Virus record (IMG/VR): IMGVR_UViG_3300048438_000153
Span: 124,001 to 188,000 of that record
DNA: 64,000 bases
Reading direction: 5' to 3' (one strand)
In this document: one piece after another, positions 8,300 to 64,000 of the stretch
Position numbering within the stretch: position 1 is the stretch's first letter
How the letters are laid out: every line of letters begins with the position of its first letter
The notes under the pieces: generated by a model
What the model was told of the DNA's origin: nothing
Database searches by the model: none
Seen by the model: the letters and a program-made list of their open reading frames with translations, nothing else
Program-made: the position numbers and the translations under genes

Positions 8300-9100
8300 T
8301 TAGCGACGTGAAGCTCGGAGAGCCTTAATAGCCTGAGCTTGGAGACGAGATTGTCTCTTAGTAACAGCAGTCTCGATGTCAGCCATGCGCTCCGCAAAGT
8401 TCATGAAACGCTCATGGAGGTTCATACCGCCGACCATACCACGAATAGTCGCAACAGCCTGACCGCGCTTGAGGTTAGGACCTGTGAAGGTGAACTTGAT
8501 GTTTTGAGGAGTCTGCTTAAGGACGAGAGTGTAGTCTCCAGTGCCTGACACGATAGTGTCGTCACCCATGCGTCTCCAACGCTCATTGAACAAGCCATAG
8601 TTGCTAAGAAGATCATGGACGAGGTTAAACTCAGTGGTGAGATCTACTTGACCCATGCCCGTCTCTTCCATGCCAGCATCCTCGTGAAGAGGAGAAGCAT
8701 CAGGGACATCACGAAGGCCGAGATCATAAGCTTTACGAGCAAGGAGAACCTTAACTTCGTCATACTTCATGATGGTCAGAGTGCGAGCGGGTGGGAAAAT
8801 GAGATGATACCCAACCATATCCACATAGATTTTGTGCTGACGAATGCCAAGGTCAATCACAGGATTATCATCATCAAAATCAAGAGTGGCTCTTTTAAAG
8901 CCTAGCATACGAGCAGACCTAAGAAGGTCTTTCGCATTCTTTCTCATCTCAACGAGGCTCAACCGACCCGGAGCACGCTGTCGGCGTTTCTTATTAGGAG
9001 CAACGTCCATCTGCTTTGAAGGGTAAAGGGCTTGGCGCTCAAGGTGAGCGATCCTGATTTCAAGATCAGAGAGGATTTCTGAAGCTGTTCTTCTCATCAT
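8300..9100 (-). CDS. Leader-bearing protein (MRRTASEIL leader), putative head cargo
   Basis: Starts MMRRTASEILSDLEIRIAHLERQA. Confidence 0.7.
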   Translation of the reverse strand: MMRRTASEILSDLEIRIAHLERQALYPSKQMDVAPNKKRRQRAPGRLSLVEMRKNAKDLLRSARMLGFKRATLDFDDDNPVIDLGIRQHKIYVDMVGYHLIFPPARTLTIMKYDEVKVLLARKAYDLGLRDVPDASPLHEDAGMEETGMGQVDLTTEFNLVHDLLSNYGLFNERWRRMGDDTIVSGTGDYTLVLKQTPQNIKFTFTGPNLKRGQAVATIRGMVGGMNLHERFMNFAERMADIETAVTKRQSRLQAQAIKALRASRR

Positions 9101-16933: not shown

Positions 16934-17641
16934 CTATCTAAAGCGTCTCAGTGAAGCGAACTTGTTTCTGTGGTACTCAGACAGCATACGCTGAGCCCTC
17001 GCCCTATTTACCTTGAACTTCCTCATGAGCTTCTCTTCAATCAAGTCCTCACGAAGACTCATTTTGAGCCAAGTGCGAATCTCACTGTTGACCTCAAAGG
17101 GGGGGATGAAAGCATATCTGTCTAGATCACGATTCAGGTAGTCGAAAGAGGCTTTCTTAGCTGTGAACTCGTCTGCGAGATACAACCCAAGCCCTTTTCT
17201 AACGACCTTGCGAATAACAGATTGACTTACGCCCCTGACCTTAATCTTCAACCTACGCATCACATCAACTACTTCTTTACCTGTGTTGGAAAGAAGCGTC
17301 TCTGCTGAGACAAGGTACTTAATACCAATCAATGGAGTGCTCTCGTTGCGAATGAGAACAAACTCATTACCGGGATAATCCTCGAAAACTGAGTCAGGTC
17401 TGACGTCTACTTTTCTTTTTGCTTCAGATAAAGGGACAAGAAAGTAGTCTTCAAAAGAAGAAACTGACTTACTTTCCGCGAGTTCTTCGAGGTCTAGTTC
17501 TCTTGGGTCGTAGATAGATTCTCTGAGAAATCTTTTCACGCTTGACAGGTCTGCCTCTGTTTCTGAGGCAGTGAGGTTTTCTAAGCGAGCGATCCTAATC
17601 TCTAGATCACTAAGGATTTCTGAAGCTGTTCTTCTCATCAT
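16934..17641 (-). CDS. Leader-bearing protein, putative head cargo
   Basis: First 30 aa identical to those of 17744-18307; remainder only weakly similar at best. Confidence 0.75.
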   Translation of the reverse strand: MMRRTASEILSDLEIRIARLENLTASETEADLSSVKRFLRESIYDPRELDLEELAESKSVSSFEDYFLVPLSEAKRKVDVRPDSVFEDYPGNEFVLIRNESTPLIGIKYLVSAETLLSNTGKEVVDVMRRLKIKVRGVSQSVIRKVVRKGLGLYLADEFTAKKASFDYLNRDLDRYAFIPPFEVNSEIRTWLKMSLREDLIEEKLMRKFKVNRARAQRMLSEYHRNKFASLRRFR

Positions 17642-17677
17642 AGAGCCTTTCTTTTTCTCTGAACGAAAGAGATCACT

Positions 17678-17691
17678 CTATAAACAATCTA
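17678..17691 (-). promoter_or_regulatory. Putative late promoter TA[AG]-N4-T[TC]TAT (representative of ~17 sites)
   Basis: TAGATTGTTTATAG. Same pattern at 11843, 16924, 18344, 19299, 21720, 22523, 25540, 27106, 32978, 43273, 44626, 52127, 58870, 60608 (minus) and 5430, 5456, 33081, 56515 (plus). Confidence 0.7.
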
Positions 17692-17743
17692 CTCACTCAA
17701 GATTCAGGATCTCACCGCCCATATACAGGACTGATCAGATGAC

Positions 17744-18307
17744 CTAAATCTTCCTCCTAGATTCTTCTATTACCTTATCCCATTTTTCTTCGTTTGTAAG
17801 ACGACGTGAGTAGATAAATTGACCTAAGCCACTCCTCTCAAACTTTTTCTGATCTGAGTTCGGAACGCAAAACTGCAAGTCCAACTCCTCACAATATTCA
17901 CCCAAAGATCCTCTGCCTGACTTGTTTTTTAAAAGATCATCGGAGTTGGTAATGCGAGCTCCAAAGTAACTTCCTTCTCGCGGATCTCCCATGACGAAGA
18001 CAACCACCCCCCATGTCTTAACACCTCTGAGATGGCAGAAAACCATTTCATTTTCCTCAACCTTCACATAGGGCTTAACGTCTTTAAGGTGGCAGAAAAT
18101 AAGACTACGGTATGGGTTAAGGTAACTCTCCGTGTCGATTTGGTCATCTTCTAAAAGCTTCTGAAGAATCTCCGTTCTTTCGTCAAATACTTTTCTCTTG
18201 AGCCAACCCCCCAAACCAGCCTCTGTTTCTGAGGCAGTGAGGTTTTCTAGGCGAGCGATCCTAATCTCTAGATCACTAAGGATTTCTGAAGCTGTTCTTC
18301 TCATCAT
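17744..18307 (-). CDS. Leader-bearing protein, putative head cargo
   Basis: Starts MMRRTASEILSDLEIRIARLENLTASETEA. Confidence 0.75.
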   Translation of the reverse strand: MMRRTASEILSDLEIRIARLENLTASETEAGLGGWLKRKVFDERTEILQKLLEDDQIDTESYLNPYRSLIFCHLKDVKPYVKVEENEMVFCHLRGVKTWGVVVFVMGDPREGSYFGARITNSDDLLKNKSGRGSLGEYCEELDLQFCVPNSDQKKFERSGLGQFIYSRRLTNEEKWDKVIEESRRKI

Positions 18308-19308: not shown

Positions 19309-19743
19309 TTATATGTCTAAGGGGTGACGGAAATCGTACTCTCGACTCTTAAGAGCCCTCAAGATGCTCACCACATCCTTGAAGCTCCATCTCACACCAC
19401 CTGAATCCTGAGCCGTCTCTTGTAAGTCAGGATAAGGTTTGAAGGTAGACAGGTCAATCGCTTGTATGTGTGTATCTCCCTGAGAAAGAGCCTTACACAC
19501 GCGATGACAACCATCCACGATCTCCCCATCCCAAATAAGAATAGGTCGGCTTAGGTCAGCGTCGAGACAACCGCCCAAGTGATCCGCGATGTGATCTTCA
19601 CCCCAAGACCAACCCTCTAAGAAAGAAGGGGGGATTCTCCACATCTGTGAGGGGAGGTCTTGGGAGAGCTGATGTAGACGCTCTACATACCAAACATCAT
19701 TCTTAGAAGGGTCATTCTTCGATCTCTGAGAGAACGTCTGCAT
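19309..19743 (-). CDS. ParB/Srx-like N-terminal domain protein
   Basis: ADLSRPILIWDGEIVDGCHRVCKAL. Confidence 0.65.
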   Translation of the reverse strand: MQTFSQRSKNDPSKNDVWYVERLHQLSQDLPSQMWRIPPSFLEGWSWGEDHIADHLGGCLDADLSRPILIWDGEIVDGCHRVCKALSQGDTHIQAIDLSTFKPYPDLQETAQDSGGVRWSFKDVVSILRALKSREYDFRHPLDI

Positions 19744-19755
19744 AAAGGTAGACTC

Positions 19756-21687
19756 CTAGTCATCAAGATAGTCGCCTAACCCTATATCATCTATGATCGT
19801 TAAGGAAGCCTCTTTCTGCTGAAGGGCAATCTCATCGAAGATGTCTAAATCTGAGGCTTTTTTCTGCTGAGATCTTTCCTTCTTTCTTTGGCGCTTCTTA
19901 TCCGCTCTCTCCTGACGCTTCTTTTTCTTAGAAGCATCCCCGTCCCCCCCCCAAGGGCTACGATTAATACCTAGAGTATTCTCAACAGTATTCCTCTTTC
20001 CAAAGAGTCGGCTAATAGCGCCCTCAGCATTAAAGTTGATGTTCATGTCCTTTTCGATTTCTTTAAGATTGTTCTCGACTTTAACAGGGGAAATCAAACC
20101 TTTGTCCATCGCGCCCTCATACTTCTTCCAAAGAATGTGAGACTTCTGATCCTTGATCTGAGTGTCCCTCCATTTCTTGAAAGCTGTCTCAACGTCTTTC
20201 TTAGTCCACACGTCGCAGTTCTGAGGATTTCTAGGTCTAATAGGTACTTTCTTACCTTTAGCATTAGTGCGTGTCCAACCCTCTGAATGAGGCTTACACG
20301 TCTCTCTCTTAATCTCCCCCACGCTAGGAATACGAGCCATCTTCAAGCTCGCGACCCTCGCGGGATTACCCCCTACTTTACGGATCGAGAAAGAACCATC
20401 GTCATCAAAGTGACTGATCCTCTTAACCTCGAAAGAACACACACCGCGCTCATCGAAGTCTTTATGGAAGCCTAGATACTCACAATCTTCAGGAATGAGA
20501 TAGAGGGAGATCTTTCTCTTATCGAAGTCATAGATGAGCTGAGAACTCGTGAACATATTATCTGTCCGACGCACCACGTTGCGAGGCGAGTTAAAGTCCT
20601 CAAACCTCTGAGCGTAGAGTCTCTCAATCAGCTCTTCGGGAGAAGATATCTGAGGGAGAAGGTCGAGCACTTTCTGAAGCCGAGCTTCAGAGCTTTTCTT
20701 GTTCTCGCCAAGTGTATAGCCCGCGTCAGGATACCTAAGACCGTGATTGGACATCGCGTGATGCTTGTCCTTTCCTGTGAGGTCAGTGATATACGCTTCA
20801 TGCTTAGCTGTATGCTCTATAGAAACAGCCTGTACGCCATCGCTAACAATCGTATGACCCCTGACCCCTCCCTCGTAAGCTAAGGCTGATTCAAGAGCAT
20901 CCTCGAACGTCCTACACTTGAGAGCATTGAGAATCCTAGAGGCATCTCTTGACCCGACAGCGCCTAAGTGACCATTTTCTTTCTTCTTCCCCTTAGATCC
21001 TTCTTTCTCATCCCACAGAACCATAAGCGCCGAGTTCGCGACGGCGATGCCGAACTCGTTGATGCCCTCTAGCCAACCTGTGTTCTCATCCCGAAAGAAA
21101 ACGACCTCTACACCTCCACGATGGGTGTGGAAGACCTTAAGCTGAGGAACGTAGTTTCTGTCCCTATTTTTGAACATGAACTTCTTCCCACCGACTTCAG
21201 AAAAAGCGATGACGCAAGATTGCTTTAACATATTTGCTCGACGGTACATACGCGCCTCTTTCTTGATATATTTTTCATTCCAAGATTCCCACTTGCTATG
21301 TTGTGGGCTAGATTTAAGTGAAGGGTCATGTCCCCAATTTTTAAGACTGATTTCCCACTTAGACATCCCCGTTTCCTCTACGGGCTGACCTGGTTTACCC
21401 CCTAGCATACGGGAGTTAAATCCTATCTCTTGTTTAGAGTTCACAAAATCGTCATCGGACCATTCAGAGAAAGGCTTACTCTTTCTGCGCTTGATGCGGT
21501 GAAAAGAGTCATACCCTGACTGAATCCCACCCTCTTCTTTCGCCTCTTGTCGATTGATAGAGGCGAGTAGGCGGTCTTCATCTTCCGCCCACGAATCAAG
21601 GGCTTTCTGACTCATATTGATGAGCCCATGCCACTTGTCGTAGACCTCTTTCTTCTCTTCTTCTGAAAGTGCTGAATACCTATACAT
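19756..21687 (-). CDS. Multi-module protein: DUF3140-like + Ntn-hydrolase (Cys nucleophile) + basic domain
   Basis: INMS...SLKNWGHDP (DUF3140-like); C158 VIA...FKNRDR...EGINEFGIAV...SNH (Ntn fold); KxA/RVA linkers. Confidence 0.7.
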   Translation of the reverse strand: MYRYSALSEEEKKEVYDKWHGLINMSQKALDSWAEDEDRLLASINRQEAKEEGGIQSGYDSFHRIKRRKSKPFSEWSDDDFVNSKQEIGFNSRMLGGKPGQPVEETGMSKWEISLKNWGHDPSLKSSPQHSKWESWNEKYIKKEARMYRRANMLKQSCVIAFSEVGGKKFMFKNRDRNYVPQLKVFHTHRGGVEVVFFRDENTGWLEGINEFGIAVANSALMVLWDEKEGSKGKKKENGHLGAVGSRDASRILNALKCRTFEDALESALAYEGGVRGHTIVSDGVQAVSIEHTAKHEAYITDLTGKDKHHAMSNHGLRYPDAGYTLGENKKSSEARLQKVLDLLPQISSPEELIERLYAQRFEDFNSPRNVVRRTDNMFTSSQLIYDFDKRKISLYLIPEDCEYLGFHKDFDERGVCSFEVKRISHFDDDGSFSIRKVGGNPARVASLKMARIPSVGEIKRETCKPHSEGWTRTNAKGKKVPIRPRNPQNCDVWTKKDVETAFKKWRDTQIKDQKSHILWKKYEGAMDKGLISPVKVENNLKEIEKDMNINFNAEGAISRLFGKRNTVENTLGINRSPWGGDGDASKKKKRQERADKKRQRKKERSQQKKASDLDIFDEIALQQKEASLTIIDDIGLGDYLDD

Positions 21688-21729: not shown

Positions 21730-22482
21730 TTACCAACGATATCTCAAGAGGAGCTTTGTTTCAGAGTCATCCACCTGAATATCAGTAGGAGGGCGCGAGT
21801 CATAAGAATAGCTGAAAGTAGGCACTAGAGAGAGCTTCCCAATCACAGACACCTCAAGCTGACCGATAGCGATGATCCGATAGTCTGAGAGTAGCCCCAC
21901 TTTCGGCTGATAGTAGCCTGTGAGGGAGATCTTGACCTTCTTATCCATGAGCGCCTCTGAGAGAGACGCATAAGAAGTGTATCTAGCAGTGAACCCCTCT
22001 CCACCCCCATCCTTGAGTTTTTCGTAGTCAGACATTGCACCTAAGCCGAGCGCCACTTGACCGTCAAACAAGGGAGAAACAAAACGAATATAACCGCCCT
22101 CAAGCTGACGTAAGACTAAATCCTTGAAAGAGTCGTACTGACTCTGCACGAACAGGTCTGTACCTACCCAACCACCCCACATCGAAGTCCATCTCAAGTG
22201 AGCGAAAGCCTGATCTTTGAAAAGCTCGTCACGGCTCTCCCCTCTCGTACCCTCTAGGACGAGAAAGAAGTGGTTGTAGGAGCGAACGTAGTCTGTTCTA
22301 CTCTTTAAGAAATAAGACAGGGTGTCGTTGTTTCCTGAGAGTCTCTCGAAGCCTAAGTCTACGCGTCCTGTAAACCCTTGCTTGGCTTCGCCTCTCGTAT
22401 CTTCTATGTTGACCTGAGCATGGGCGTCAAAAGCATAGAAGCAGATCATTAGGGACAGTAAGATTTTTCTCATAGGCCACAC
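21730..22482 (-). CDS. Outer-membrane beta-barrel protein, DUF481/YdiY-like
   Basis: Signal peptide (..AHA|Q), SGNNDT motif, amphipathic strands, C-terminal LRYRW. Confidence 0.75.
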   Translation of the reverse strand: MWPMRKILLSLMICFYAFDAHAQVNIEDTRGEAKQGFTGRVDLGFERLSGNNDTLSYFLKSRTDYVRSYNHFFLVLEGTRGESRDELFKDQAFAHLRWTSMWGGWVGTDLFVQSQYDSFKDLVLRQLEGGYIRFVSPLFDGQVALGLGAMSDYEKLKDGGGEGFTARYTSYASLSEALMDKKVKISLTGYYQPKVGLLSDYRIIAIGQLEVSVIGKLSLVPTFSYSYDSRPPTDIQVDDSETKLLLRYRW

Positions 22483-22769: not shown

Positions 22770-22990
22770 TAGGACTTGATCTCCAAGATTAGGTCTTGAG
22801 CCTTTCGGACTCCTCGATCATCTGAGGGGATAATGACGAGCTTCCCTTTCTTATCCCACTTGGCGACCAAAGGGAGCTTGCCCCACTTCGCTGTGAGACA
22901 TTCCCCATCAGAAACGAGAACTCGACCATCGTAAGATTTATTATCGAGGAAAGCTCTCACCGCCTTCTTGTCCTGTAAAGCTATCTTCAA
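22769..22990 (-). CDS. Small hypothetical protein
   Basis: 73-aa ORF overlapping its neighbours at start and stop. Confidence 0.6.
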   Translation of the reverse strand: MKIALQDKKAVRAFLDNKSYDGRVLVSDGECLTAKWGKLPLVAKWDKKGKLVIIPSDDRGVRKAQDLILEIKS

Positions 22991-23277
22991 AAGAAATACT
23001 CCTGTGTTTGATTTATTCTCTTTTGTGCTATCTTAAAATAATCTTCGTGAATCTCCGACCCTATGTATTTCCTATTCATTTCTTTAGCGACCTTGGCTGT
23101 AGTTCCACTCCCTAAGAATGGATCGTAAACTACGTCTCCCTCGTTAGACCAAGAAATGATGTGGTCGTGAGCTAGGTTTTCGGGGAATGTGGCTGAGTGC
23201 TTATACGCAATACTGTCAGAATGACCATACCCACCCCCTACAATAAATCTCCAAATATTAAACCTACGGCCAACCAT
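22987..23277 (-). pseudogene. C-terminal fragment of a beta-class N4/N6 DNA methyltransferase
   Basis: HSATFP..L..VYDPFLGSGTT (SAM-binding motif). No catalytic (S/D)PPY; in-frame TGA 24 codons upstream; AT-richer than flanks. Confidence 0.7.
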
Positions 23278-23385: not shown

Positions 23386-24060
23386 TTAGAGTACGTTACC
23401 TGATCCATCGTAGACTACTACGAGTGGGTCAAGTGTTGTACCGCTAACAGGGTCGATTCTAACACTCTTAGCTTTAGAAAGTGCTCCCCTAGCAAGAGAA
23501 AGATAAAAGCTAGAGTCGCTCTCATCAATCGCCTTAAAGACAGTCGTATCAAAAAAGCTGATTGTAGGGAGTGTGAGACCGGGATCAGCATCGAAGATGT
23601 GACCCGTAGGGACAGTGTAGGACGCACCGCTAAGAATAGAAAGGATCTCAGCAGTAGTGGTGCTCGCGTTGTTACCCTCGATCTCGACATTAGGAAGGTT
23701 GAGATCACCTAGACCACCACCCTGAATCAGACCGTTGATCGTAGCCAAATCTAGCGCAAGACCATCCCTCATGCGAGAGATGTAGAGGTCAGCGATACGA
23801 GAGGCATCAGTGACGCTCAGAATGTCTGCATTGTCATCTTGGTTGACGAGGATGTAAGCAGTAAGACCGCTCACCTCTCTCGCGATAGTCAAGCCGTCCA
23901 CTACAGGAGTAGTGTTCACAGGCTGACGAAGGTAACGAGGACCTTGCGCTACAGGATCAACAACAGGGTTGAGCTGTGAGCGGTTAGGGAAGAGGTCTAC
24001 AATCTGAAAGACGTTGTTAGGGATCGTCACATCCCTCATGCAAATAACAGGACTAGCCAT
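23386..24060 (-). CDS. Putative virion structural protein, paralog 1 of 3
   Basis: Shares QI.DLFP..SQ.N..P..GP.Y.R and a C-terminal VVY..xG motif with the next two genes; acidic, Lys-poor. Confidence 0.6.
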   Translation of the reverse strand: MASPVICMRDVTIPNNVFQIVDLFPNRSQLNPVVDPVAQGPRYLRQPVNTTPVVDGLTIAREVSGLTAYILVNQDDNADILSVTDASRIADLYISRMRDGLALDLATINGLIQGGGLGDLNLPNVEIEGNNASTTTAEILSILSGASYTVPTGHIFDADPGLTLPTISFFDTTVFKAIDESDSSFYLSLARGALSKAKSVRIDPVSGTTLDPLVVVYDGSGNVL

Positions 24061-24078
24061 GTCTATTTTCTCCTATTC

Positions 24079-24777
24079 TTACTGAAGGATGAGTGTGCCG
24101 TCGTTGTTATACGCAACGAGGACAGGTGTAGGACTACCCACTGAGTCAGTCTTAGACTGAGCAACAGAGATTTGACCCTGACGAGATGAGATGAAGAAGC
24201 TACCGTCGTTGCTAGAAATATCCTTCACGCCCGTAGGGATTGTAAAGAAAGCATTGACTACGTTAGGGATGAAAGCATCTCCGTTATTCTCATCACCGAC
24301 GTCTGTGTTGGTAGGGAGAGTGAAGATACGAGTCTCAGAAACAATCTGAAGGATCTGCTCAACAGTCGCAGTAGTAGCGCCGTTACCGATGCCGACAGCC
24401 CCTCCTGTGACAGCCTGAATAGCTGTGTTGATCCCTGTAGCGTCGAGAGCCTCTACGCTAGCAACCCTATCGAGAATACTCTGAGCGATAGTGTCAGCCT
24501 GAACAGGCGTAAGTGCGATGTCTCCCGCGTTGCTGTTCTCTACGGTAGCTACGAGATAAGCAGAAAGACCACTCACCTCTTTTTGGACTACAAAAGTAGC
24601 GTCAAGAGAAACAGTCTGAATGAGGTCTCCCGTCCAAGGAGCTCGGAAATAGCGAGGGCCTTGAAAACGAGGTGTGAGAACCGCGTTTGACTGAGACTTG
24701 TGTGGGAAAAGATCAGTAATCTGAACGAGTACTTCATCGGTGCTGTTGGTCACAGCGGGCATACAAATAAAAGGCAT
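24079..24777 (-). CDS. Putative virion structural protein, paralog 2 of 3
   Basis: QITDLFPHKSQSN...QGPRYFR; SGLSAYL. Confidence 0.6.
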   Translation of the reverse strand: MPFICMPAVTNSTDEVLVQITDLFPHKSQSNAVLTPRFQGPRYFRAPWTGDLIQTVSLDATFVVQKEVSGLSAYLVATVENSNAGDIALTPVQADTIAQSILDRVASVEALDATGINTAIQAVTGGAVGIGNGATTATVEQILQIVSETRIFTLPTNTDVGDENNGDAFIPNVVNAFFTIPTGVKDISSNDGSFFISSRQGQISVAQSKTDSVGSPTPVLVAYNNDGTLILQ

Positions 24778-24789
24778 TTTAGACTCCTA

Positions 24790-25494
24790 TTAAGCGAACA
24801 GACTTCCGTCTGAGAGATAGATAGTGACGATAGGGTCTGCGGTCAAAACGCCCGCAAAGCCCCTATCAGCATCCTGAGCTGACGCAAACCCTGCAAGCGC
24901 ACCCTCTTCAGCAGAAATCGCCCAAGAAGAGTCGCCGTTCACAGGGTGACGCACGTCATTCTGAAAGCGAGCGTCTGTGTTCACGTCAGGGATGAAAGCG
25001 CCTGCTTGCTCGACCACAGAGCCGACCGTAACGAGATAAGTCTCGCCCGCCAAAACACGGAGAAGGTTCTCGACTGAACCTGTTGAGAGGTTAGCAGTAA
25101 GAGTCGCTCCCACAGCAACACCGCCGATGATCGCATCGACCGCAACAAGATCAAGAGCGCCACCTGTGCGAATCTCAGAAACCATGAGGCTTGCAATCTC
25201 TCTCGCTTCAGAAAGAGTAAGCGCGGGGCCGTTATTACCTACTTGAATGTTGTTCAAGAGGTAAGCAACAAGACCCTTTGAGTCACGAGCGAAAGAAATA
25301 ACACCCGCCGCAGTTGCGAGCTGAGCGCGGAAAGCGCCTCTAAAGCCCAAGTCAAGCTGACGGACGTAAATAGGTCCTGATGCGGGAGGGTCGATAGAGG
25401 TGTTCCTCTGACTCTCGTTAGGCGAAAGGTCAGTCACCATAACTGATCCATTCTGAACTTCTTTTCTGCGAGCTACCAAGTAAACCTGTGGCAT
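24790..25494 (-). CDS. Putative virion structural protein, paralog 3 of 3
   Basis: VTDLSPNESQRN...SGPIYVR; KGLVAYL. Confidence 0.6.
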   Translation of the reverse strand: MPQVYLVARRKEVQNGSVMVTDLSPNESQRNTSIDPPASGPIYVRQLDLGFRGAFRAQLATAAGVISFARDSKGLVAYLLNNIQVGNNGPALTLSEAREIASLMVSEIRTGGALDLVAVDAIIGGVAVGATLTANLSTGSVENLLRVLAGETYLVTVGSVVEQAGAFIPDVNTDARFQNDVRHPVNGDSSWAISAEEGALAGFASAQDADRGFAGVLTADPIVTIYLSDGSLFA

Positions 25495-25553
25495 AACATT
25501 TTCTCCTTTGGGAAAGAACTGAGTCTGAAAGTGGAGTCACATAAAGGAATTAT

Positions 25554-26282
25554 TTAGCCTCTATTGATAATCCCACATCGAATCGAGAATAGGGGCGTAC
25601 CTCCATCAGAGCCTACGAACACTTCAGGCACAGACACGCCTGTAAGAGAAAGCTCTTCCCCCGGCCTCAACATCGAAGGACTCATCCCCGCAGAAAGAGA
25701 GAAAAAGATGTTCTGCCCTCCCTGCGCCTGAGAAAAGTTCTTAATGTTAAAAGTACCGCTAAAGTAAGGGAGGTGGAGGTTGAGCGCGCCAGCTCCTAAT
25801 GCATCAGGGATCACACCGTTAGTATCTAAGTCAGGCACATTCCCAATCGTAGTGAAATAAGGCACTGTCACGCCGAAGAAATCATACGGAGGCACGACTA
25901 CAATAGGTCCGAACGCTGTGGTTGACCCATCAGACAAGACACCCCTTAGTCTGAGGTAAGCAACGTCGCTATCAGGGGGAGTCCTCGTCTGACCCGCCTG
26001 TGGGACAGAGGCGAAGTCATCGAAGTTGAAAAGAAAACGAGTCTGATCCCTCTTCGTATCTTCCTGACCCCTGATCCGCGCTTGGCGGAGAGATTTAGAG
26101 ACAAAGCTTCTACCTGTCCTTACGGAGAACATCAGAGATGGGTTCAAGAAAGCATCATTTAAGTTGCTTGCGCCATGAACCTCAACATCTGTGATGTTCC
26201 TAAGAATGGTGTTGCTAACGGACATATCAACTACGTTCTTTGAACGATAGTTAAGGCTAGGTAGTAATCGACCTCTAGACAT
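25554..26282 (-). CDS. Hypothetical beta-rich protein (possibly structural)
   Basis: 242-aa ORF within the late-gene run. Confidence 0.6.
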   Translation of the reverse strand: MSRGRLLPSLNYRSKNVVDMSVSNTILRNITDVEVHGASNLNDAFLNPSLMFSVRTGRSFVSKSLRQARIRGQEDTKRDQTRFLFNFDDFASVPQAGQTRTPPDSDVAYLRLRGVLSDGSTTAFGPIVVVPPYDFFGVTVPYFTTIGNVPDLDTNGVIPDALGAGALNLHLPYFSGTFNIKNFSQAQGGQNIFFSLSAGMSPSMLRPGEELSLTGVSVPEVFVGSDGGTPLFSIRCGIINRG

Positions 26283-52136: not shown

Positions 52137-54785
52137 TTACTCAACCCTCTGTCTGAGGAGATAAAGGTTAGTCTCGTGAGCGTTCGCCATAGACATAATA
52201 AAGTCGTCCATCCCTAGAGTGAGAACGTCCATTTCTTTCAGCGCCTTATAGATATTCTTGAAGGCTACCTGTAGAGCTTCCTCCACAATCAGAGCGCGGA
52301 GAATAGGGTTGTCTTCAGCCTGAACCTCAGCGATAGGGAGAATCGTGTTCGCCATCAACTGTGCCTGATCTACAGGAGAGACAGCTCGACCTCCGTATGT
52401 ACCCACGATCTTCTCAGCGAGCGTGTCGATCTCTTCGATAAGACTTTGGTAAATCCTCTCTAGTAAGAGATGATCTCCATACTGACTCTCACCCTTCACT
52501 TGCCAATGACTCGTCCAATGAGCCCAATGCGCGCCCCTCAATATGGCGAGCAGAACTTGGAGCGTAGAGAGGGCCATGTCTTTCTCAGAGGCTTTCTTTC
52601 TCCAACCCCCACCTAGCTCTTTGTAAGACTTACTAGCCCAACCGTTCGCATAGGCGCTAGGGTACTTCCTAAAGCCTTCTCCGCCACGAACAGGATTGAT
52701 AATCTTATCACCCCTAGAAACAGGGTTCTTTCTATCGCCTTTAGCGAGGTCTATAATCTCGCCCCACAGCTTAGGGTCAGTAGGCATATTCTCAGCCCCC
52801 CTCTCTATGAAGTTAATGTGCTGAAAAGAGTCCACAGGGATTTGACGATACATCCTAGAAAGAATAGACCTCACGGCCTCTCTCTGCATCGCTTTCTTTC
52901 TTAGTTGCACTTTTCTCGATTTTTGGTTCTTCTGAGTCACGGTCGAACTCCCCCCACCTTCTAGGCGTTTATATCTTTTAGGGTTGTCTCTTCTCCTCTT
53001 ACCTGAAAGGAGAAGCTTGGTCTTATTTCGGAGGTAGTACCTCTTGTTGTCTCTCTTCATCTGACCACGATCTCTACGTTTTTTCTTAACATAGTCGATC
53101 TTGTTCTTTCTGTTGAGAGTCCCCTTAGTATCTCTTTGCTTTCTTCTAGGTGGGCGCAAAGTGATCTTAGCTCTCCCCCGATGCTTCGGGTCAGCTATTC
53201 TTTCTTCTTGAGCCATCTTAGGTCTGCGAGCTAAGCCTGTGGTTTTATTAGCGTCCACATAGGGGTGTCCATATTGATCTCCAGGTATGCCTGAGCTTCT
53301 AGGGCGTTGATGAAGAGGCTTACCATCAGGCTGATTAGGTAGTGCGTTCGGATTCGGTGCTTTCCCGTAGTTAAGAGAAGCTCCTGAGCTGTCTGAAGGC
53401 GTGTTGGAAACAGGAGGCCCTGATCGGTACTCGTCACGCCCTTTCGGATGACCGCTAGGAAGGGGCAGAACTCTATCTCTTTGCGACTTACCATCCTCAT
53501 AGTCTTGACGGCTAGGTTCGGGGGCAGAGGTGTCGTTATCGAGTCCGTCTTGACGACTCTTGCTAACCCAAGTCTGAACGCCCGCTAAGTCCTGTATAAG
53601 TTGCCTAGCAACACGGGTGTTAGAGTCCTCCGTGACAGCCTGATAGAACAAGCCAACAGCTTTGTCCCAAGACTTTCTCTTAAAGTGCTTGAGAGCCCTA
53701 AAGAAAGGACTACTGTTGATGTGTCTACGAACGGTGGAGTTGTTTTTTCTGAGAATGGGATTTCTGAAGTAGCGAGATCTGAACTCCTCAACCTCGTCTA
53801 AGAGTCTCGTATAAAACTCAACGTCATCAAGGGCATGGAAGTTAGCTAAGTTAGGGTCTAAGCCTAAGTCCTTGAGCTCCTGACGCACTTGACGCTCTTT
53901 TGACTTATTATGCTGAGTGATCTTAGTGTCTCTTCTCTTAAAGGGTAAGCCCCCTCTATCTGACAAGCCCTCTCTCTGCCCTATTTCTGACTGAACCGCG
54001 TGGACTAACTCATGCCTAACAGTGCCCTTCACCTGAGCCAAGTCATCTCGGCTGTAATCGGTCTTCTCAGGGATCATAATCTTGATGTGGTGAGCGGAGT
54101 TCCGAAAGCTGTGCGTACCGAGTACGTTTGAATCCATAAACTTAAAAGACAGGACTATGGGATAAACAAATTCAGGGTGAGTGATTCTCGCCTCCACACC
54201 CAAGTCTATGTGGGTGTGGGAGGTCTTAAGATACTCTCGGGGAAACCGACTTTGAGCGAGCTCAAACATATCCTTATCTTGATAAGGATATGACTCTTTC
54301 TTTTCCTTCAGATTTTTAGACACATATAGAAGGCATAAAGAGAGCTTCATAACATCTATCTTGTTATCCCTAAGAACCTTGAGCGACTTATCTGAATTTG
54401 AAAGAGTTTCGAGGTCATTCCAACTAAGAATCTTCTCAAAGAGAGTAAGTGCAAGGTTAGCGTCGTCTCTTATGTTCTTATTTTTATAAGTGTTTTTCTT
54501 AGTGTCTGCGATGACTATTCGGAGTACGTCATGATAGTCATGAAGGAGATCTTCGAGAAGCTCGAATAGCTCTTCCATGTCTTCGTTTTCAAAGTCTTTA
54601 AGATACTCCGAAATCTCTTTCGCCATGCCTTCAAGGTCTTCGATCTCCTCTTCGCTCACTATAGAACTAAAAATTTTAGTGAGAACGTGATCAGCTAACA
54701 CACCCTGAGCTATTTCAGCCACTATTCTAAAAAGCTCGGGAGGAGGCTTCATTAAGCCTGCTTCTTTGTCTGAGAACCTTGCCAT
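52137..54785 (-). CDS. Multi-module protein: zincin + basic modules + Dps/ferritin-like domain
   Basis: KEA-GLMKPP, RHELVH, HALDDVEFYTRL; C-terminal HWQVKG...DHLLLERIY....EIDTLAEKI. Confidence 0.78.
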   Translation of the reverse strand: MARFSDKEAGLMKPPPELFRIVAEIAQGVLADHVLTKIFSSIVSEEEIEDLEGMAKEISEYLKDFENEDMEELFELLEDLLHDYHDVLRIVIADTKKNTYKNKNIRDDANLALTLFEKILSWNDLETLSNSDKSLKVLRDNKIDVMKLSLCLLYVSKNLKEKKESYPYQDKDMFELAQSRFPREYLKTSHTHIDLGVEARITHPEFVYPIVLSFKFMDSNVLGTHSFRNSAHHIKIMIPEKTDYSRDDLAQVKGTVRHELVHAVQSEIGQREGLSDRGGLPFKRRDTKITQHNKSKERQVRQELKDLGLDPNLANFHALDDVEFYTRLLDEVEEFRSRYFRNPILRKNNSTVRRHINSSPFFRALKHFKRKSWDKAVGLFYQAVTEDSNTRVARQLIQDLAGVQTWVSKSRQDGLDNDTSAPEPSRQDYEDGKSQRDRVLPLPSGHPKGRDEYRSGPPVSNTPSDSSGASLNYGKAPNPNALPNQPDGKPLHQRPRSSGIPGDQYGHPYVDANKTTGLARRPKMAQEERIADPKHRGRAKITLRPPRRKQRDTKGTLNRKNKIDYVKKKRRDRGQMKRDNKRYYLRNKTKLLLSGKRRRDNPKRYKRLEGGGSSTVTQKNQKSRKVQLRKKAMQREAVRSILSRMYRQIPVDSFQHINFIERGAENMPTDPKLWGEIIDLAKGDRKNPVSRGDKIINPVRGGEGFRKYPSAYANGWASKSYKELGGGWRKKASEKDMALSTLQVLLAILRGAHWAHWTSHWQVKGESQYGDHLLLERIYQSLIEEIDTLAEKIVGTYGGRAVSPVDQAQLMANTILPIAEVQAEDNPILRALIVEEALQVAFKNIYKALKEMDVLTLGMDDFIMSMANAHETNLYLLRQRVE

Positions 54786-56555: not shown

Positions 56556-57011
56556 ATGGAATCCTCACTCAAGTACAGTACCGAAAGGATAAGAGTTACC
56601 ATGAAAAACGTCTATTACTTCGCATACGGAACGAACCTCGAAGAACACTCTATGAAAGATAGATATCCCTCAGCAGAAATCTTCAAGTTCGGTGTTCTTA
56701 AAGGGTTCAAGCTCAAGTTCAAGAACGGAGTGAGCTCAGTAGAAGAAAGAGAGCGATCCGACTATGTTGAAGGACTCATTTACACCATCAACGAAAACGA
56801 TATTGAAGATCCCTTGAAAGGGTCAACCCGATGTGAGGTAGACGTGATTACGGACTGCGGAAACACAGTGCGCGCTATCCTCTTCTTCGCCAAGAAGAAA
56901 GAAGAGTCTCGACCCTCTGAAGAATACCTCTCAAGGATGCTTAAGAAATACGGAGACTATGGGTTCAATAAGAGGCACTTGGAGAGCGCGTTTCTTTCGG
57001 CAGATAGTTAA
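56556..57011 (+). CDS. Gamma-glutamylcyclotransferase (AIG2/GGCT-like)
   Basis: YYFAYGTNL, VEGLIY, PSEEYL. Confidence 0.75.
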   Translation: MESSLKYSTERIRVTMKNVYYFAYGTNLEEHSMKDRYPSAEIFKFGVLKGFKLKFKNGVSSVEERERSDYVEGLIYTINENDIEDPLKGSTRCEVDVITDCGNTVRAILFFAKKKEESRPSEEYLSRMLKKYGDYGFNKRHLESAFLSADS

Positions 57012-57514
57012 CGGTCGAGTAATATCACCATATCTTTGGATTTATACACCCTAGAAAGAGACTTCCACACACGACGGGCGTGTTCTGATGTAGTTGCGTT
57101 GTCACTTGGGTTGCAATAGTTAGGGATGAAGAGAAAAGGCTTCCCATTTGTCCGACTATTTAAGGTGTGTCGAGCTAGTCTTAAATACCCTTCCAAGCCA
57201 CACTTTTTTCCCCAAAAGTCTTTACTTAGCTTGGAGTACACGACTTCAACCACATAAACCTCCCCATTAGAGTTTGATAGAGAAGGGTTCGCGTCGATCA
57301 GTTGAAGCATTTCGTCTGCACAGTAATACTCAGAAATACTCTCACGATCTAATAGATAAACGGTAGCCTCAAACTCACCCACTTCTTTTCCGTCTATTGA
57401 GTATGCCTCAATCAGAGTCGTGGGTTCGCCCCACTCAAACCCCGTTGTTTCTTTGAAAGTGACTCCTGAGCACTGCCTCAGATAAGCATTCGCAACTCTT
57501 TGTATTAGGTTCAT
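57008..57514 (-). CDS. RVAxxYL-leader protein, possibly GNAT-like
   Basis: Starts MNLIQRVANAYLRQC; WGKKCGLEGY...SEHARRVWKSL. Confidence 0.6.
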   Translation of the reverse strand: MNLIQRVANAYLRQCSGVTFKETTGFEWGEPTTLIEAYSIDGKEVGEFEATVYLLDRESISEYYCADEMLQLIDANPSLSNSNGEVYVVEVVYSKLSKDFWGKKCGLEGYLRLARHTLNSRTNGKPFLFIPNYCNPSDNATTSEHARRVWKSLSRVYKSKDMVILLDR

Positions 57515-58993: not shown

Positions 58994-59872
58994 TTAGCGA
59001 GTAACGGTGAGGCGAGCAAGACCGCGTGGGTTGTACGCGCCGATACCCAAATTCTCAAAGACTGAGAAACCGATGGTGCGAGCCTTCGGATCGTCAGCAG
59101 AAAGAACAGTAAGCTCAGTACGGACAGGGATGCGTCCGAACATCTCAGGCTCACAGCAGACGTACACAGTGCCGACAGGAACTAGACGGCTAGTGATGAT
59201 CTGTGCGCCCCAAAGAGTAGCCTGAAGACCAGTCTTAAGGAGCGCTGCTTGGCTCTCGATGTCGAGAATGTCGCGACCAAACTTACGGATGTCAGCGTAG
59301 TCACGAGCGTTCATGAAGACGCGAGAGACACGGAGGTCGTGACGCTCGATAAGAGCGTATGCGTCAGCGAGAACAGCACCGTTAAGAGGAGCGATGACAG
59401 GAATGTCAGCGTTAGTCTGACCAGGGAGACTGTCGAAGCCTTGAGTCGCAACCGCGTCGAGGATAGCGAATACACGCTCGTCCTCAGCCGCCTGAATCTG
59501 AGCGCGAGCCAAGTCTTGAGCCCTCTCGATCAGATCGAAGCGACGCTCCTTGATCTGAGTGAGTGGGATCTCAGGGTTTGATGCGATCTCGAAAAGAGGG
59601 AAGATCACACGACGTGGCTTGGTGATAGCGAGGATGTTCTCGCCCTCTTCACCTACCACGAACGCGGTCACGTCAGGGTCTTTGTCGTAGATCGGAAGCG
59701 CACCATCAGGAAGTTGCTCTACGAGGAAAGTCTTACGACCAACGCTCGTATAGTCACGACGGAGACGGAGAGGTTGTGTCATTGAAGCGGCTAGCTTCGC
59801 ACGACCTTGTGGGGTCTTAATGTAGTCAGCAATGATCTTTTGCTTTACTGCGTTATCGACGTTGTTACTCAT
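58994..59872 (-). CDS. Major capsid protein (HK97 fold)
   Basis: 292 aa; order protease-scaffold-decoration-MCP followed by a terminator; IQAAEDERVFAILD spine helix, VFMNARDYADI, LWGAQIITS. Confidence 0.82.
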   Translation of the reverse strand: MSNNVDNAVKQKIIADYIKTPQGRAKLAASMTQPLRLRRDYTSVGRKTFLVEQLPDGALPIYDKDPDVTAFVVGEEGENILAITKPRRVIFPLFEIASNPEIPLTQIKERRFDLIERAQDLARAQIQAAEDERVFAILDAVATQGFDSLPGQTNADIPVIAPLNGAVLADAYALIERHDLRVSRVFMNARDYADIRKFGRDILDIESQAALLKTGLQATLWGAQIITSRLVPVGTVYVCCEPEMFGRIPVRTELTVLSADDPKARTIGFSVFENLGIGAYNPRGLARLTVTR

Positions 59873-62674: not shown

Positions 62675-64000
62675 TTACCGCCCATGAACGAATGTGATAA
62701 GCTTGGAAAGTCTTACCAAGCGAAGTGAGTCTTTGCGAGTTAACTTTGAACCATGACACTCCTCAGCGTCAGAGATAAAGCTAGCCACTTTATTATACCT
62801 GTCTGCTGAGTCTATTTGACTAGCAATACGGTACAGGTAAGAAGGTAGGTAGACGTCGAAACGATCATTGACGAGTCTGATGTTATCGACTGCCTCTTTC
62901 TTAGAGGAGGCGATCTTCACAGCGGTGTCAAGAGCTGAGAAATAGAGATTCTTTCTCTTTATCTTTCTCTTACTCTTGCCCTCTTTAATGATTGTATCGT
63001 CAGCGGTAGTAGGGTCGCCTGTTGCGGGTACATTAACCGCTTTCTGAGCGAGCTCCTCTTTGATCTCCTTTTCGAGCTTCTTTCTCATGCGACCAACGAG
63101 AGCTTCAGTCACTACGCCCTCAAGTTGATCGAGAATAGAATCAGGAGTCTCTTCTTTCTTAGTGGATTCACCCTCTTCATCGCCCTCGCCATCTCCGAAG
63201 TCGAAAGGACCTGCGAGATGGGATGAAGCAGACTTGCTCAACCACTGCGGAGGAACTTGATTAAGTTTTTCCTCTTGTGGGTTGGCGTCAGCGGAAGGGA
63301 TTTCAAGAGTATTCCTAGCGACCGCGCCCTTAAAGGCAGGTATGGCAACCCAAGAAGCCTCAATGAAGGTTACGCCACCTGTTTCCCCCGTAGTCTCATG
63401 ACCACAAAGCTCGGCAACACGGTGCTTGTTTCCATTCTCATCGAAGAAAACATTACCCTTCTCATACTTAACGTGTCGGCACATCTGAGGCTCATCAGCC
63501 GCGACGTGACCGCACTTGGTGCAGATGGTGAAATCGACAGAACAACCCATCGACATACCGTTCATTTCACCCGATAAGATTTGTCTAACGAGATCTTCGT
63601 GCTTTCTATCTGTGGCTACAAGAATATCCACATAGATAGATTCACCAATATCTCGCATAACAGCATCAATGATACGCCCTTTAGAGAGCTCTTCAACTTG
63701 AACGTGTTCAACAAAGTTATGCGCCCCCACAAACGTCTTATAAGACTTCTTAATAACGCCCCTAGACCAACAGTCGAGGTTGTTATTGATGTACTTATCT
63801 GTCTCGGAGGTGACTCGATAGTCTGCATACTTTCTGTTAATATTCTGACCCTCTTCCTCAACTGAACCTGTCTTTACATTAGGGACAGAAACAGCGTCTA
63901 CGGAGCACACAATCGTAGAGTGTGTGAGTAGAAACCGATCAGGAGTGAAGGGCTCGCCTAAAAGCTCTTCTGCTTTCTTCTTAAGGCTCGAATCGAGGCG
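62675..64000 (-). CDS. Prohead maturation protease (HK97/assemblin-type, with Zn-binding insert), 5' end outside window
   Basis: Frame open to 64000; FVEH...GRIIDA, GMSMG, CxxC..C.H insert, FIEASWVAIPA. Confidence 0.8.
   Translation of the reverse strand, partial: RLDSSLKKKAEELLGEPFTPDRFLLTHSTIVCSVDAVSVPNVKTGSVEEEGQNINRKYADYRVTSETDKYINNNLDCWSRGVIKKSYKTFVGAHNFVEHVQVEELSKGRIIDAVMRDIGESIYVDILVATDRKHEDLVRQILSGEMNGMSMGCSVDFTICTKCGHVAADEPQMCRHVKYEKGNVFFDENGNKHRVAELCGHETTGETGGVTFIEASWVAIPAFKGAVARNTLEIPSADANPQEEKLNQVPPQWLSKSASSHLAGPFDFGDGEGDEEGESTKKEETPDSILDQLEGVVTEALVGRMRKKLEKEIKEELAQKAVNVPATGDPTTADDTIIKEGKSKRKIKRKNLYFSALDTAVKIASSKKEAVDNIRLVNDRFDVYLPSYLYRIASQIDSADRYNKVASFISDAEECHGSKLTRKDSLRLVRLSKLITFVHGR

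What the first reader, a model, noticed from the sequence alone, without database searches (positions are those of the whole stretch)
19756..21687. Ntn-hydrolase buried in a polyprotein, catalytic Cys directly after a K-x-S site
Residue 158 begins CVIAFS...FKNRDR...EGINEFG...SNH, the pattern of Cys-nucleophile Ntn hydrolases (C45/NRDE-like). Established: these enzymes need the Cys as a free N-terminus. It follows KKEA-RMYRRA-NMLKQS, lies behind an unrelated DUF3140-like domain, and is followed by an RVASLKMA linker and a basic module. Cleavage at KQS|C is therefore needed for activity, which is the best internal support for processing. Autocleavage is the alternative explanation.
Basis: partly seen in the sequence, partly recalled or inferred. 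Interest (0 to 1): 0.75.

Follow-up and report, generated by a model that had tools for sequence, protein, structure and literature searches.

The report
Protease-gated Ntn hydrolase in jumbo phage
A jumbo-phage gene joins three modules, the middle one an amide-cleaving enzyme whose catalytic cysteine is masked until the chain is cut just before it; in hundreds of phage relatives the cut site matches the phage lineage's own capsid-maturation protease.

Summary
It has three modules: a viral DUF3140-type helical domain (1-143), a Cys-Ntn hydrolase (158-440) and a basic/acidic tail (453-643). In the AlphaFold model, Cys158 superposes on the nucleophile of IAT, NAAA, BSH and PVA (Z 15-19). Cys158 and the K-x-R-D-R-x-Y, E-G-x-N and N-H-G motifs are invariant in 175 relatives.

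The family is almost entirely viral and often sits inside giant multi-enzyme proteins.

The three residues before the Cys fall into two strict classes:
- [KR]-x-[ASG] in 127 relatives, including this protein (KQS).
- [LIVM]-x-E in 39 relatives, which is the known T4 gp21 cleavage motif.

The class tracks the protease. Phages with the second class carry a gp21-type protease. Phages with the first class carry this window's phage-G-type protease instead. Their proteomes are enriched in [RK]-x-A-[SN] at N-termini and module borders.

However, the split is essentially one evolutionary event, nothing shows packaging or cleavage directly, and self-cleavage is the rule for this fold. Autoprocessing therefore remains a strong rival. 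The substrate is unknown.

The parts
19756..21687 (-). Whole ORF, 643 aa plus stop: three-module fusion protein
21259..21687 (-). Module 1, residues 1-143: helical DUF3140-type domain, 39 invariant columns in 85 relatives, fold without a PDB match
21217..21258 (-). Linker 1, residues 144-157 (KEA-RMYRRA-NMLKQS), predicted disordered (pLDDT below 50); holds KEA|R, RRA|N and KQS|C
21214..21216 (-). Codon of Cys158, the predicted N-terminal nucleophile; invariant in 175 relatives
20368..21216 (-). Module 2, residues 158-440: Cys-Ntn hydrolase domain (AAT/C45-like)
20335..20358 (-). RVASLKMA (residues 444-451) in linker 2; the NP-[AS]-[RK]-[VI]-A-S-L motif follows the Ntn domain in many relatives
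19759..20331 (-). Module 3, residues 453-643: low-confidence basic region, K/R run, acidic tail with KKA|S and KEA|S; shared only with the two closest relatives
62675..64000 (-). Head maturation protease (472 aa; ORF runs to 64093, beyond the window); phage-G gp19 / mycobacteriophage cluster C type; candidate processing enzyme
58994..59872 (-). Major head protein (292 aa, phrog_2522); shows this is a phage head module
16934..18307 (-). Two genes (16934-17641, 17744-18307) that share the lineage-typical N-terminal leader starting MMRRTAS and carrying two [RK]-x-A sites; a third is at 8300-9100

Best explanation
The gene encodes a modular effector of a roughly 275-kb jumbo phage: a DUF3140-type domain, a Cys-Ntn amidohydrolase and a basic tail, joined by disordered linkers. 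As translated, the hydrolase is a zymogen, because its nucleophile Cys158 is blocked by 157 upstream residues. I propose that the protein is taken into the prohead, and that the phage's own head-maturation protease (window 62675-64093) cuts at [KR]-x-[AS] sites in the linkers, including K155-Q-S157|C158. That cut creates the free N-terminal Cys and switches the enzyme on inside the capsid. The pieces would then leave the capsid with the DNA and act in the next host on an unknown amide substrate. Shown here: the fold, the nucleophile position, the motif classes, their link to protease type and the motif enrichment. Inferred: packaging, who cuts, timing and substrate.
For: Fold and nucleophile. 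C158, K173, R175, D176, R177, Y179, D200, E207, G208, N210, N314, H315 and R336 are invariant in 175 relatives.

Pre-Cys residues in 174 relatives: [KR]-x-[ASG] in 127, [LIVM]-x-E in 39, Met alone in 6. P2, P4 and P5 vary.

L/I-x-E is the published gp21 site (PMC9026906).

Peptidase_S77 (gp21 type):
- Found in 8 of 11 IMG/VR records of the x-E class, including 4 of 4 that are at least 90% complete, and in phage MA9V-2.
- Found in 0 of 13 records of the K/R class and not in this genome.

This window's protease type:
- Found in 9 of 13 K/R-class records, including 5 of 5 that are at least 90% complete.
- Found in 0 of 12 x-E-class records.

In two gp21-type genomes the major head protein and genes beside the protease start with leaders such as MNLKKLITE|S. 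The Ntn enzyme there starts MKKDILINE|C.

Motif counts against shuffles:
- [RK].A[SN] in the first 40 residues of this genome: 38 against 8.9 +/- 3.3 expected.
- [RKH][VILT]AS in the first 40 residues: 24 against 1.8 expected.
- The same enrichment appears in an independent genome of the lineage and in neither gp21-type genome.
- The motif follows the DUF3140 domain in 84 of 91 proteins.
- It is conserved at the ends of the protease's catalytic domain in 7 orthologues.
- It occurs 7 times in this protein against 2.2 expected, P 0.004, and 5 of the 7 lie in disordered linkers or the tail.

Relatives are parts of multi-enzyme proteins with TopoIB, RNA ligase, 2H phosphoesterase or SOD, typical of injected polyvalent proteins (PMC5512222).
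Against: From established knowledge, every characterised Ntn hydrolase with a propeptide frees its nucleophile by itself or through Met aminopeptidase; none is known to need a foreign protease. The scissile bond sits at the start of a buried central strand, which is hard for another enzyme to reach.

The motif-protease association is essentially one evolutionary split. Monophyly of the non-K/R classes is not rejected (AU p 0.26), so it could be clade history.

No proteomic or other direct evidence shows that this protein is in the virion. The specificity of the phage-G-type protease is unpublished in the literature I could search and was inferred here partly from the same motif.

Leaders as short as MINE|C or MKKQS|C leave no room for a T4-style targeting sequence. 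Six relatives start M|C and need no protease. The complex prediction gave no answer.
Confidence: 0.5

Rival explanations
1. Autoprocessing. The Ntn domain cuts the S157|C158 bond itself by an N-to-S acyl shift, as IAT, NAAA, acid ceramidase and penicillin V acylase do. This releases the DUF3140 module and activates the enzyme in the infected cell, without the prohead protease. The conserved P3/P1 residues would serve the self-cleavage geometry, and their two versions would be clade history.
For: The fold and full catalytic set are conserved. The best structural matches are self-processing enzymes, including precursor structures 2x1c, 6dxw, 5u84 and 2iwm. About 50 of the relatives sampled are stand-alone genes with leaders of only 4-5 residues, like the 3-residue leader of PVA. 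The motif classes map to one or a few clades. A P1 acid assisting self-cleavage is known from glycosylasparaginase (my own knowledge).
Against: It gives no reason why the conserved pre-Cys tripeptide should equal the gp21 site in exactly the phages that carry gp21. It gives no reason why it should equal the proteome-wide enriched [RK]-x-A-[SN] motif in the other lineage. Strict conservation of P3 with a free P2 is the signature of protease recognition. From my knowledge it is not usual for Ntn self-cleavage sites.
Confidence: 0.37
2. The Ntn domain is itself the processing peptidase of these modular proteins. It first cleaves its own N-terminal border and then cuts [KR]-x-A|S borders of other modules in trans.
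For: The self-site and the linker motifs look alike. The domain sits inside many giant multi-enzyme proteins that presumably need cutting.
Against: In gp21-type phages the L/I-x-E sites are known substrates of gp21, and T4 has no such Ntn enzyme (PMC9026906). The motif is enriched across about 270 genes of a genome that has a single Ntn copy and a canonical head protease. The nearest folds are small-molecule amidases rather than endopeptidases.
Confidence: 0.05
3. No cleavage of the fusion is needed. An internal start makes a short-leader or leaderless enzyme (Met148 has an AAGAGG box 5 nt upstream; Met153 is the start codon of the stand-alone homologue), or the fused copy is a catalytically silent remnant.
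For: The closest relative starts the gene at the equivalent of Met153 with its own GAGGAG box. Met at -5 is retained in most fused homologues. There is a Shine-Dalgarno-like box before Met148.
Against: An internal start still leaves a 5- or 10-residue leader before Cys158, so a cut is still needed. There is no Shine-Dalgarno box before Met153 in this genome. The fused architecture is conserved down to about 45% identity in at least 13 clusters, and the catalytic residues are intact, so it is not a remnant.
Confidence: 0.04

Closest known systems
Isopenicillin-N acyltransferase (AAT/IAT, MEROPS C45; PDB 2x1c, 2x1d) and protein CV2077 (3gvz)
   Same: Same Ntn fold (Z 18-19). Cys158 superposes on Cys103. 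A precursor form carries an N-terminal segment that must be removed. There is a weak Pfam PF03417 match.
   Different: About 16-19% identity, and the query is below the Pfam cut-off. IAT cuts itself at Gly|Cys and keeps both chains as a heterodimer. Here the upstream part is an unrelated domain, P1 is Ser/Ala with a basic P3, and the family is viral.
NAAA, acid ceramidase, bile salt hydrolase and penicillin V acylase (Cys-Ntn amidases)
   Same: Fold, nucleophile position and an Arg/Asp pair 17-18 residues after the Cys. PVA has a 3-residue leader and BSH has Met-Cys, like the short-leader and M|C members of this family.
   Different: Those enzymes are cellular or lysosomal with known lipid, bile or antibiotic substrates, and they self-process. 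No substrate is known here.
T4 internal proteins IPI-III and Alt, which have a capsid-targeting leader removed by gp21 at L/I-x-E
   Same: Short N-terminal leader ending in a protease motif, head-internal location, and delivery with the DNA. Homologues in gp21-type phages have leaders such as MKKDILINE|C that fit this pattern.
   Different: In T4 the cut only removes a targeting tag. Here it would also create the catalytic residue. This window's phage has no gp21-type protease and a different motif.
Inner-body and ejection proteins of phiKZ and SPN3US, cut by gp175/gp245 at S/A/G-x-E
   Same: A jumbo phage in which many head-internal proteins carry propeptides and a short lineage-specific cleavage motif.
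   Different: A different protease clade (phage G / cluster C mycobacteriophage type) and a motif with basic P3 and Ala/Ser P1 instead of Glu P1.
Polyvalent proteins of phages and conjugative elements (Iyer et al. 2017, PMC5512222)
   Same: Several unrelated enzyme domains in one chain, in phages, with proposed proteolytic release. Relatives combine the Ntn domain with TopoIB, RNA ligase, 2H phosphoesterase, PAP2 or SOD.
   Different: That survey does not list an Ntn hydrolase or DUF3140 among the domains. Its proposed processing enzymes are zincin-like metallopeptidases.

Membership tests
Ntn-hydrolase superfamily, Cys-nucleophile branch (AAT/C45-like) | Four-layer alpha-beta-beta-alpha fold | tested here: met
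   Model pLDDT above 90 over 159-440. Foldseek E 7e-10 to IAT. VIA-align Z 15-19 to more than 40 Ntn entries.
Ntn-hydrolase superfamily, Cys-nucleophile branch (AAT/C45-like) | Nucleophile is the first residue of the mature chain, at the start of a central strand | tested here: met
   Residue 158 aligns with C103 of IAT, C126 of NAAA, C2 of BSH and C1 of PVA. Cys is invariant in 175 relatives.
Ntn-hydrolase superfamily, Cys-nucleophile branch (AAT/C45-like) | Conserved helper residues (Arg/Asp after the nucleophile, Asn oxyanion hole, distal Arg) | tested here: met
   R175, D176, N210, N314 and R336 are invariant. Their roles are assigned by analogy and were not tested.
Ntn-hydrolase superfamily, Cys-nucleophile branch (AAT/C45-like) | Pfam PF03417 score above the gathering cut-off | tested here: not met
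   The query scores 17.6 bits against a 23.2 cut-off. Some relatives pass: P0129 30.9 bits, P0125 25.0 bits. This makes it a divergent viral branch rather than a typical member.
Ntn-hydrolase superfamily, Cys-nucleophile branch (AAT/C45-like) | Precursor is cleaved to give a free N-terminal Cys, and the enzyme is active only afterwards | not testable with these tools
   Needs expression and N-terminal mapping.
Prohead-protease substrates with a leader (T4 CTS / gp21 type) | Leader or linker ends in the cleavage motif of the phage's own head protease | tested here: inconclusive
   Met for x-E-class homologues ([LIVM]-x-E with Peptidase_S77 in the genome). For this protein the motif fits the lineage-wide enriched [RK]-x-A-[SN], but that protease's specificity is not known experimentally.
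Prohead-protease substrates with a leader (T4 CTS / gp21 type) | Protein is present in the head and is cut by the head protease | not testable with these tools
   No virion proteomics is available. The complex prediction gave no answer.
Polyvalent proteins (Iyer et al. 2017) | Two or more unrelated effector-type domains in one phage-encoded polypeptide | tested here: met
   DUF3140-type, Ntn and basic module. Relatives reach 2792 aa with 5-6 enzyme domains.
Polyvalent proteins (Iyer et al. 2017) | Packaged in the virion and injected | not testable with these tools
   Inferred only.
DUF3140 (PF11338) | Profile match above the cut-off | tested here: inconclusive
   The query scores 16.9-19.5 bits against a 25 cut-off. 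66 of 85 close relatives match at E up to 0.01, best 5e-12. Atlas look-alikes are small viral DUF3140 proteins.

The most novel reading that the evidence does not exclude
A large, almost purely viral family of Cys-Ntn hydrolases are capsid-carried zymogens. Their catalytic N-terminus is made not by self-cleavage, as in all known Ntn enzymes, but by the phage's head-maturation protease. The three residues before the Cys have been retuned to whichever protease the lineage uses: L/I/V-x-E with gp21, and K/R-x-A/S/G with the phage-G/cluster-C type. As a by-product, this would give the unknown cleavage specificity of that second protease clade and a list of its likely substrates.
Probability: 0.45. 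Interest if true: 0.8.

Novelty: new variant of a known kind. Interest (0 to 1): 0.66.

Why it matters
If the head protease creates the catalytic residue, this would be the first Ntn hydrolase activated in trans. It would also be a clean example of a phage keeping an injected enzyme switched off until the capsid matures. It would give a testable cleavage rule ([KR]-x-[AS] before Ser, Asn or Cys) for a widespread but uncharacterised clade of prohead proteases found in phage G, cluster C mycobacteriophages and many marine and freshwater jumbo phages. It would mark out their packaged proteins by sequence alone. It also adds an unlisted enzyme and an unlisted conserved domain (viral DUF3140) to the repertoire of injected polyvalent proteins. 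If the enzyme simply cleaves itself, the finding is a routine new viral branch of a known enzyme family.

Tried and rejected
- PHROGs on the query: no family.
- Sequence searches of the PDB with the protein, the N-domain profile and the Ntn profile: nothing significant.
- Fold search of the N-domain: no match better than E 2.
- Atlas search of the C-terminal module: nothing above chance.
- Megablast of 16 kb against cultured phages: no match.
- tblastn against cultured phages found only Chryseobacterium phages MA9V-1 and MA9V-2. Their paper has only an SDS-PAGE gel and no mass spectrometry.
- The search for related loci with a wide alignment failed for lack of a conserved stretch. It worked with a narrower one.
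- Complex prediction of the protease with residues 140-172: 'no answer', so it is not used as evidence.
- I looked for several independent motif switches on the tree to break the phylogenetic confounding. The labels are clustered, and one switch is not rejected.
- Major head protein N-termini could not be compared because they are 96.6% identical between two genomes of the lineage.
- I considered the window's fusion being a recent deletion accident. I rejected this because the fused architecture recurs down to about 45% identity.
- I considered R-x-x-S in RVAS being a basophilic kinase site. I did not pursue it, because most pre-Cys sites have Ala rather than Ser.
- Literature searches for DUF3140, for Ntn hydrolases in virions, or for the cleavage motif of this protease clade found nothing.
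Full report
**What is there.**
The coordinates 19756-21687 hold one intact ORF of 643 aa on the minus strand. The plus strand is full of stops. The window is part of a single 275,102-bp IMG/VR virus record, about 88% complete.

The window and its flank carry a normal tailed-phage head module:
- major head protein at 58994-59872;
- head maturation protease at 62675-64093;
- portal and large terminase just beyond the window.

The genome has a single copy of each of the three modules of this protein.

**Anatomy.**
The AlphaFold2 model was built on 123 aligned relatives. It shows:
- a confident helical domain, residues 10-143;
- a disordered linker, residues 144-156 (pLDDT below 50);
- a confident mixed alpha/beta domain starting with a strand at 159 and ending near 440;
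- a low-confidence remainder, residues 445-643.

Pfam gives only weak hits, to DUF3140 (19-116) and to AAT (191-397). The Cys158 codon is at 21214-21216.

**The Ntn fold is real.**
Foldseek finds isopenicillin-N acyltransferase, CV2077, choloylglycine hydrolases, NAAA and acid ceramidase, with E from 7e-10 down to 1e-3. VIA-align gives Z 15-19. In row after row, model residue 158 pairs with the first residue of the mature chain: C103 of IAT, C126 of NAAA, C2 of BSH, C1 of PVA, C249 of the 66.3-kDa PLBD protein.

In a 175-sequence alignment the following are invariant: C158, K173, R175, D176, R177, Y179, D200, E207, G208, N210, L221, D226, G277, N314, H315, G323 and R336. By what is established for this fold, the enzyme cannot work until the bond S157|C158 is broken.

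**A viral, modular family.**
An exhaustive profile-free search found 426 cluster representatives. Two pattern scans of IMG/VR found 475 and 328 loci. A scan of one genome for each of 185,579 prokaryote species found only two MAG contigs.

The domain occurs alone, at the N-terminus, in the middle or at the C-terminus of proteins up to 2792 aa. Examples are:
- RNA ligase + nucleotidyltransferase + HAD + 2H phosphoesterase + Ntn + topoisomerase IB;
- 2H + superoxide dismutase + DUF5661 + Ntn;
- PAP2 + Ntn;
- Ntn + topoisomerase IB, three more times;
- Ntn + ChaC-type gamma-glutamylcyclotransferase.

This is the style of the injected 'polyvalent proteins' of Iyer et al. (PMC5512222). Their survey and their later jumbo-phage survey do not mention an Ntn hydrolase.

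**The fusion.**
The closest relative is 96% identical, on a 32-kb contig. It has two genes where this window has one. The first is a 507-aa gene with the same DUF3140-type domain joined to a different module that includes a hydrophobic, membrane-span-like stretch. A 25-nt spacer with GAGGAG follows, and then a 491-aa gene starting MLKQS|C.

The fused DUF3140-Ntn form recurs in at least 13 clusters down to about 45% identity, so it is not an accident. The DUF3140-type domain is the most conserved part, with 39 invariant columns in 85 proteins. It can sit at either end of many different partners. It belongs to PF11338 (66 of 85 match) and has no structural relative in the PDB. In another genome of the lineage it lies 4 kb from the Ntn gene. 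It is absent from the two gp21-type genomes examined.

**The key result: the residues before the Cys.**
In 174 relatives the residue at -1 is:

| Residue at -1 | Count |
|---|---|
| Ala | 94 |
| Glu | 39 |
| Ser | 24 |
| Gly | 9 |
| the initiator Met | 6 |
| Gln | 1 |
| Val | 1 |

Position -3 is coupled to it. It is K or R with A/S/G in 127 cases, and L/I/V/M (once T) with E in 39. Positions -2, -4 and -5 vary. The same rule holds in 160 IMG/VR loci, down to leaders as short as MINE|C and MKKQS|C.

The second version is exactly the published cleavage motif of the T4 prohead protease gp21, L/I-x-E (PMC9026906).

**The motif class tracks the protease type.**

| Motif class | Genomes with Peptidase_S77 (gp21 type) | Genomes with this window's protease type |
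|---|---|---|
| x-E | 8 of 11 long IMG/VR records (4 of 4 at least 90% complete), plus cultured Chryseobacterium phage MA9V-2 | 0 of 12 |
| K/R | 0 of 13 records (0 of 5 at least 90% complete), and not in this genome | 9 of 13 (5 of 5 at least 90% complete) |

Relatives of this window's protease are phage G gp19, cluster C mycobacteriophage proteases and Tunturi_5.

In two gp21-type genomes, N-terminal leaders of the form M...hydrophobic-hydrophobic-x-E are about 2.4-fold over-represented. They head the major head protein and the genes between it and the protease (MKINNILNE|S, MKKLKDLLKE|S, MNLKKLITE|S). The Ntn enzyme there begins MKKDILINE|C or MKKLINE|C.

**The K/R-x-A motif in this lineage.**
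Counts in this genome against shuffled controls are:

| Motif and region | Observed | Expected |
|---|---|---|
| [RK][IVLT]AS[MLEYF], whole genome | 29 | 4.1 +/- 2.0 |
| [RK].A[SN], first 40 residues | 38 | 8.9 +/- 3.3 |
| [RKH][VILT]AS, first 40 residues | 24 | 1.8 +/- 1.3 |

An independent genome of the lineage (38% GC, protease 63% identical) shows the same enrichment. The two gp21-type genomes show none.

At least eight genes share an N-terminal leader that starts M(M)RRTAS and contains two such sites. The motif is conserved at the N-terminal end of the protease and just after its catalytic domain in seven orthologues. It follows the DUF3140-type domain in 84 of 91 proteins. It follows the Ntn domain as NP-[AS]-[RK]-[VI]-A-S-L in many relatives, and it occurs at extreme C-termini.

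In this protein [RK].[AS][SNC] occurs 7 times against 2.2 expected (P 0.004). Five of the seven lie in disordered linkers or the tail: RRA|N at 149, KQS|C at 155, RVA|S at 444, KKA|S at 609 and KEA|S at 625.

**Weighing the two mechanisms.**
For self-cleavage:
- It is the rule for the fold.
- The best structural matches are self-processing enzymes.
- Short leaders exist elsewhere, as in PVA.
- Some relatives start M|C.
- The scissile bond is at the start of a buried strand.

For the head protease:
- P3 and P1 are as conserved as the active site while P2 is free.
- The tripeptide equals the known gp21 site only in phages that have gp21.
- It equals the proteome-wide enriched motif in the other lineage.
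- The leaders resemble those of head proteins in the same genomes.

The main weakness is that the two classes form one or a few clades. Monophyly of the non-K/R classes is not rejected (AU p 0.26). The association is therefore close to a single evolutionary event. Its force comes from the a priori match to a published motif, not from counts. Nothing here shows packaging or cleavage, and the complex prediction returned no answer. I put the protease model at about 0.5 and autoprocessing at about 0.37.

**Function.**
The substrate is unknown. The nearest folds cleave non-peptide amides or dipeptides. The repeated fusion to ChaC-type gamma-glutamylcyclotransferases hints at gamma-glutamyl or Cys-Gly compounds, but this is only a lead. 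The company the domain keeps (topoisomerase IB, RNA repair enzymes, 2H phosphoesterases, SOD) fits an enzyme delivered with the DNA to act early in the next host.

**Novelty.**
I found no paper in the searchable library that links an Ntn hydrolase to a phage head or to a prohead protease. I found none that mentions DUF3140, and none that gives the specificity of this protease clade. The parts are known kinds: an Ntn zymogen, protease-processed head-internal proteins and polyvalent proteins. The proposed combination, a head protease creating the catalytic residue with the site retuned per lineage, would be a new variant.

Noticed in passing
window 8300-9100, 16934-17641, 17744-18307 (all minus strand); also genome 215107-215940 and others: At least eight otherwise different genes share a roughly 20-residue N-terminal leader, M(M)RRTASE-ILSDLE-IR[IV]A[RSH]LE. 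It is amphipathic and holds two [RK]-x-A sites. The same leader type occurs in an independent genome of the lineage. It looks like a capsid-targeting or propeptide leader of this jumbo-phage group.
   Followed up: partly
whole genome; e.g. window 57008-57514, 62675-64093: The short motif [RKH]-[VILT]-A-S is 5- to 13-fold over-represented in the proteome, most strongly in the first 40 residues. It is not over-represented in gp21-type phages. It could be a cleavage site, a docking peptide or both.
   Followed up: partly
window 21730-22482 (-) and 58192-58743 (-): Two phage genes carry signal peptides. The first matches DUF481, a bacterial outer-membrane beta-barrel family (E 1.6e-10), and lies directly upstream of the Ntn gene. 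It is conserved in the closest relative.
   Followed up: no
window 22987-23277 (-): A 96-aa ORF matches only the last third (143-221 of 221) of the N6/N4 DNA methylase profile, so it looks like a truncated methylase gene. The closest relative lacks this stretch.
   Followed up: no
window 23386-26282 (-): Four tandem genes of 224-242 aa. By eye the first three share sequence features and look like paralogues. They have no family match and are conserved in the closest relative. They may be structural proteins.
   Followed up: no
window 19309-19743 (-): The 144-aa gene directly downstream of the Ntn gene has a D-G-x-H-R stretch reminiscent of ParB/sulfiredoxin-type nucleases, but no Pfam hit. It keeps the same position in the closest relative.
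   Followed up: no
window 62675-64093 (-), protease residues about 190-245: The catalytic domain of the head protease carries a conserved Cys/His cluster (C-x2-C, then C-x-H, then C-G-H) in all seven orthologues. This suggests a zinc-binding insert, which is unusual for prohead proteases.
   Followed up: no
window 58994-59872 (-): The 292-aa major head protein is 96.6% identical to that of a genome with 38% GC (this one is about 47%). That genome's protease is only 63% identical. The conservation is striking, or the capsid gene was exchanged recently.
   Followed up: no
window 52137-54785 (-): An 882-aa protein has a C-terminal region matching Dps-like / starvation-inducible DNA-binding protein families (phrog_3636, phrog_858).
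   Followed up: no
L001:4452-5975: In the closest relative the DUF3140-type domain is joined to a roughly 350-aa module with a hydrophobic, membrane-span-like stretch, instead of the Ntn enzyme. This shows cassette-like swapping at the KKEA-RMYR-[RQ]-A border.
   Followed up: partly
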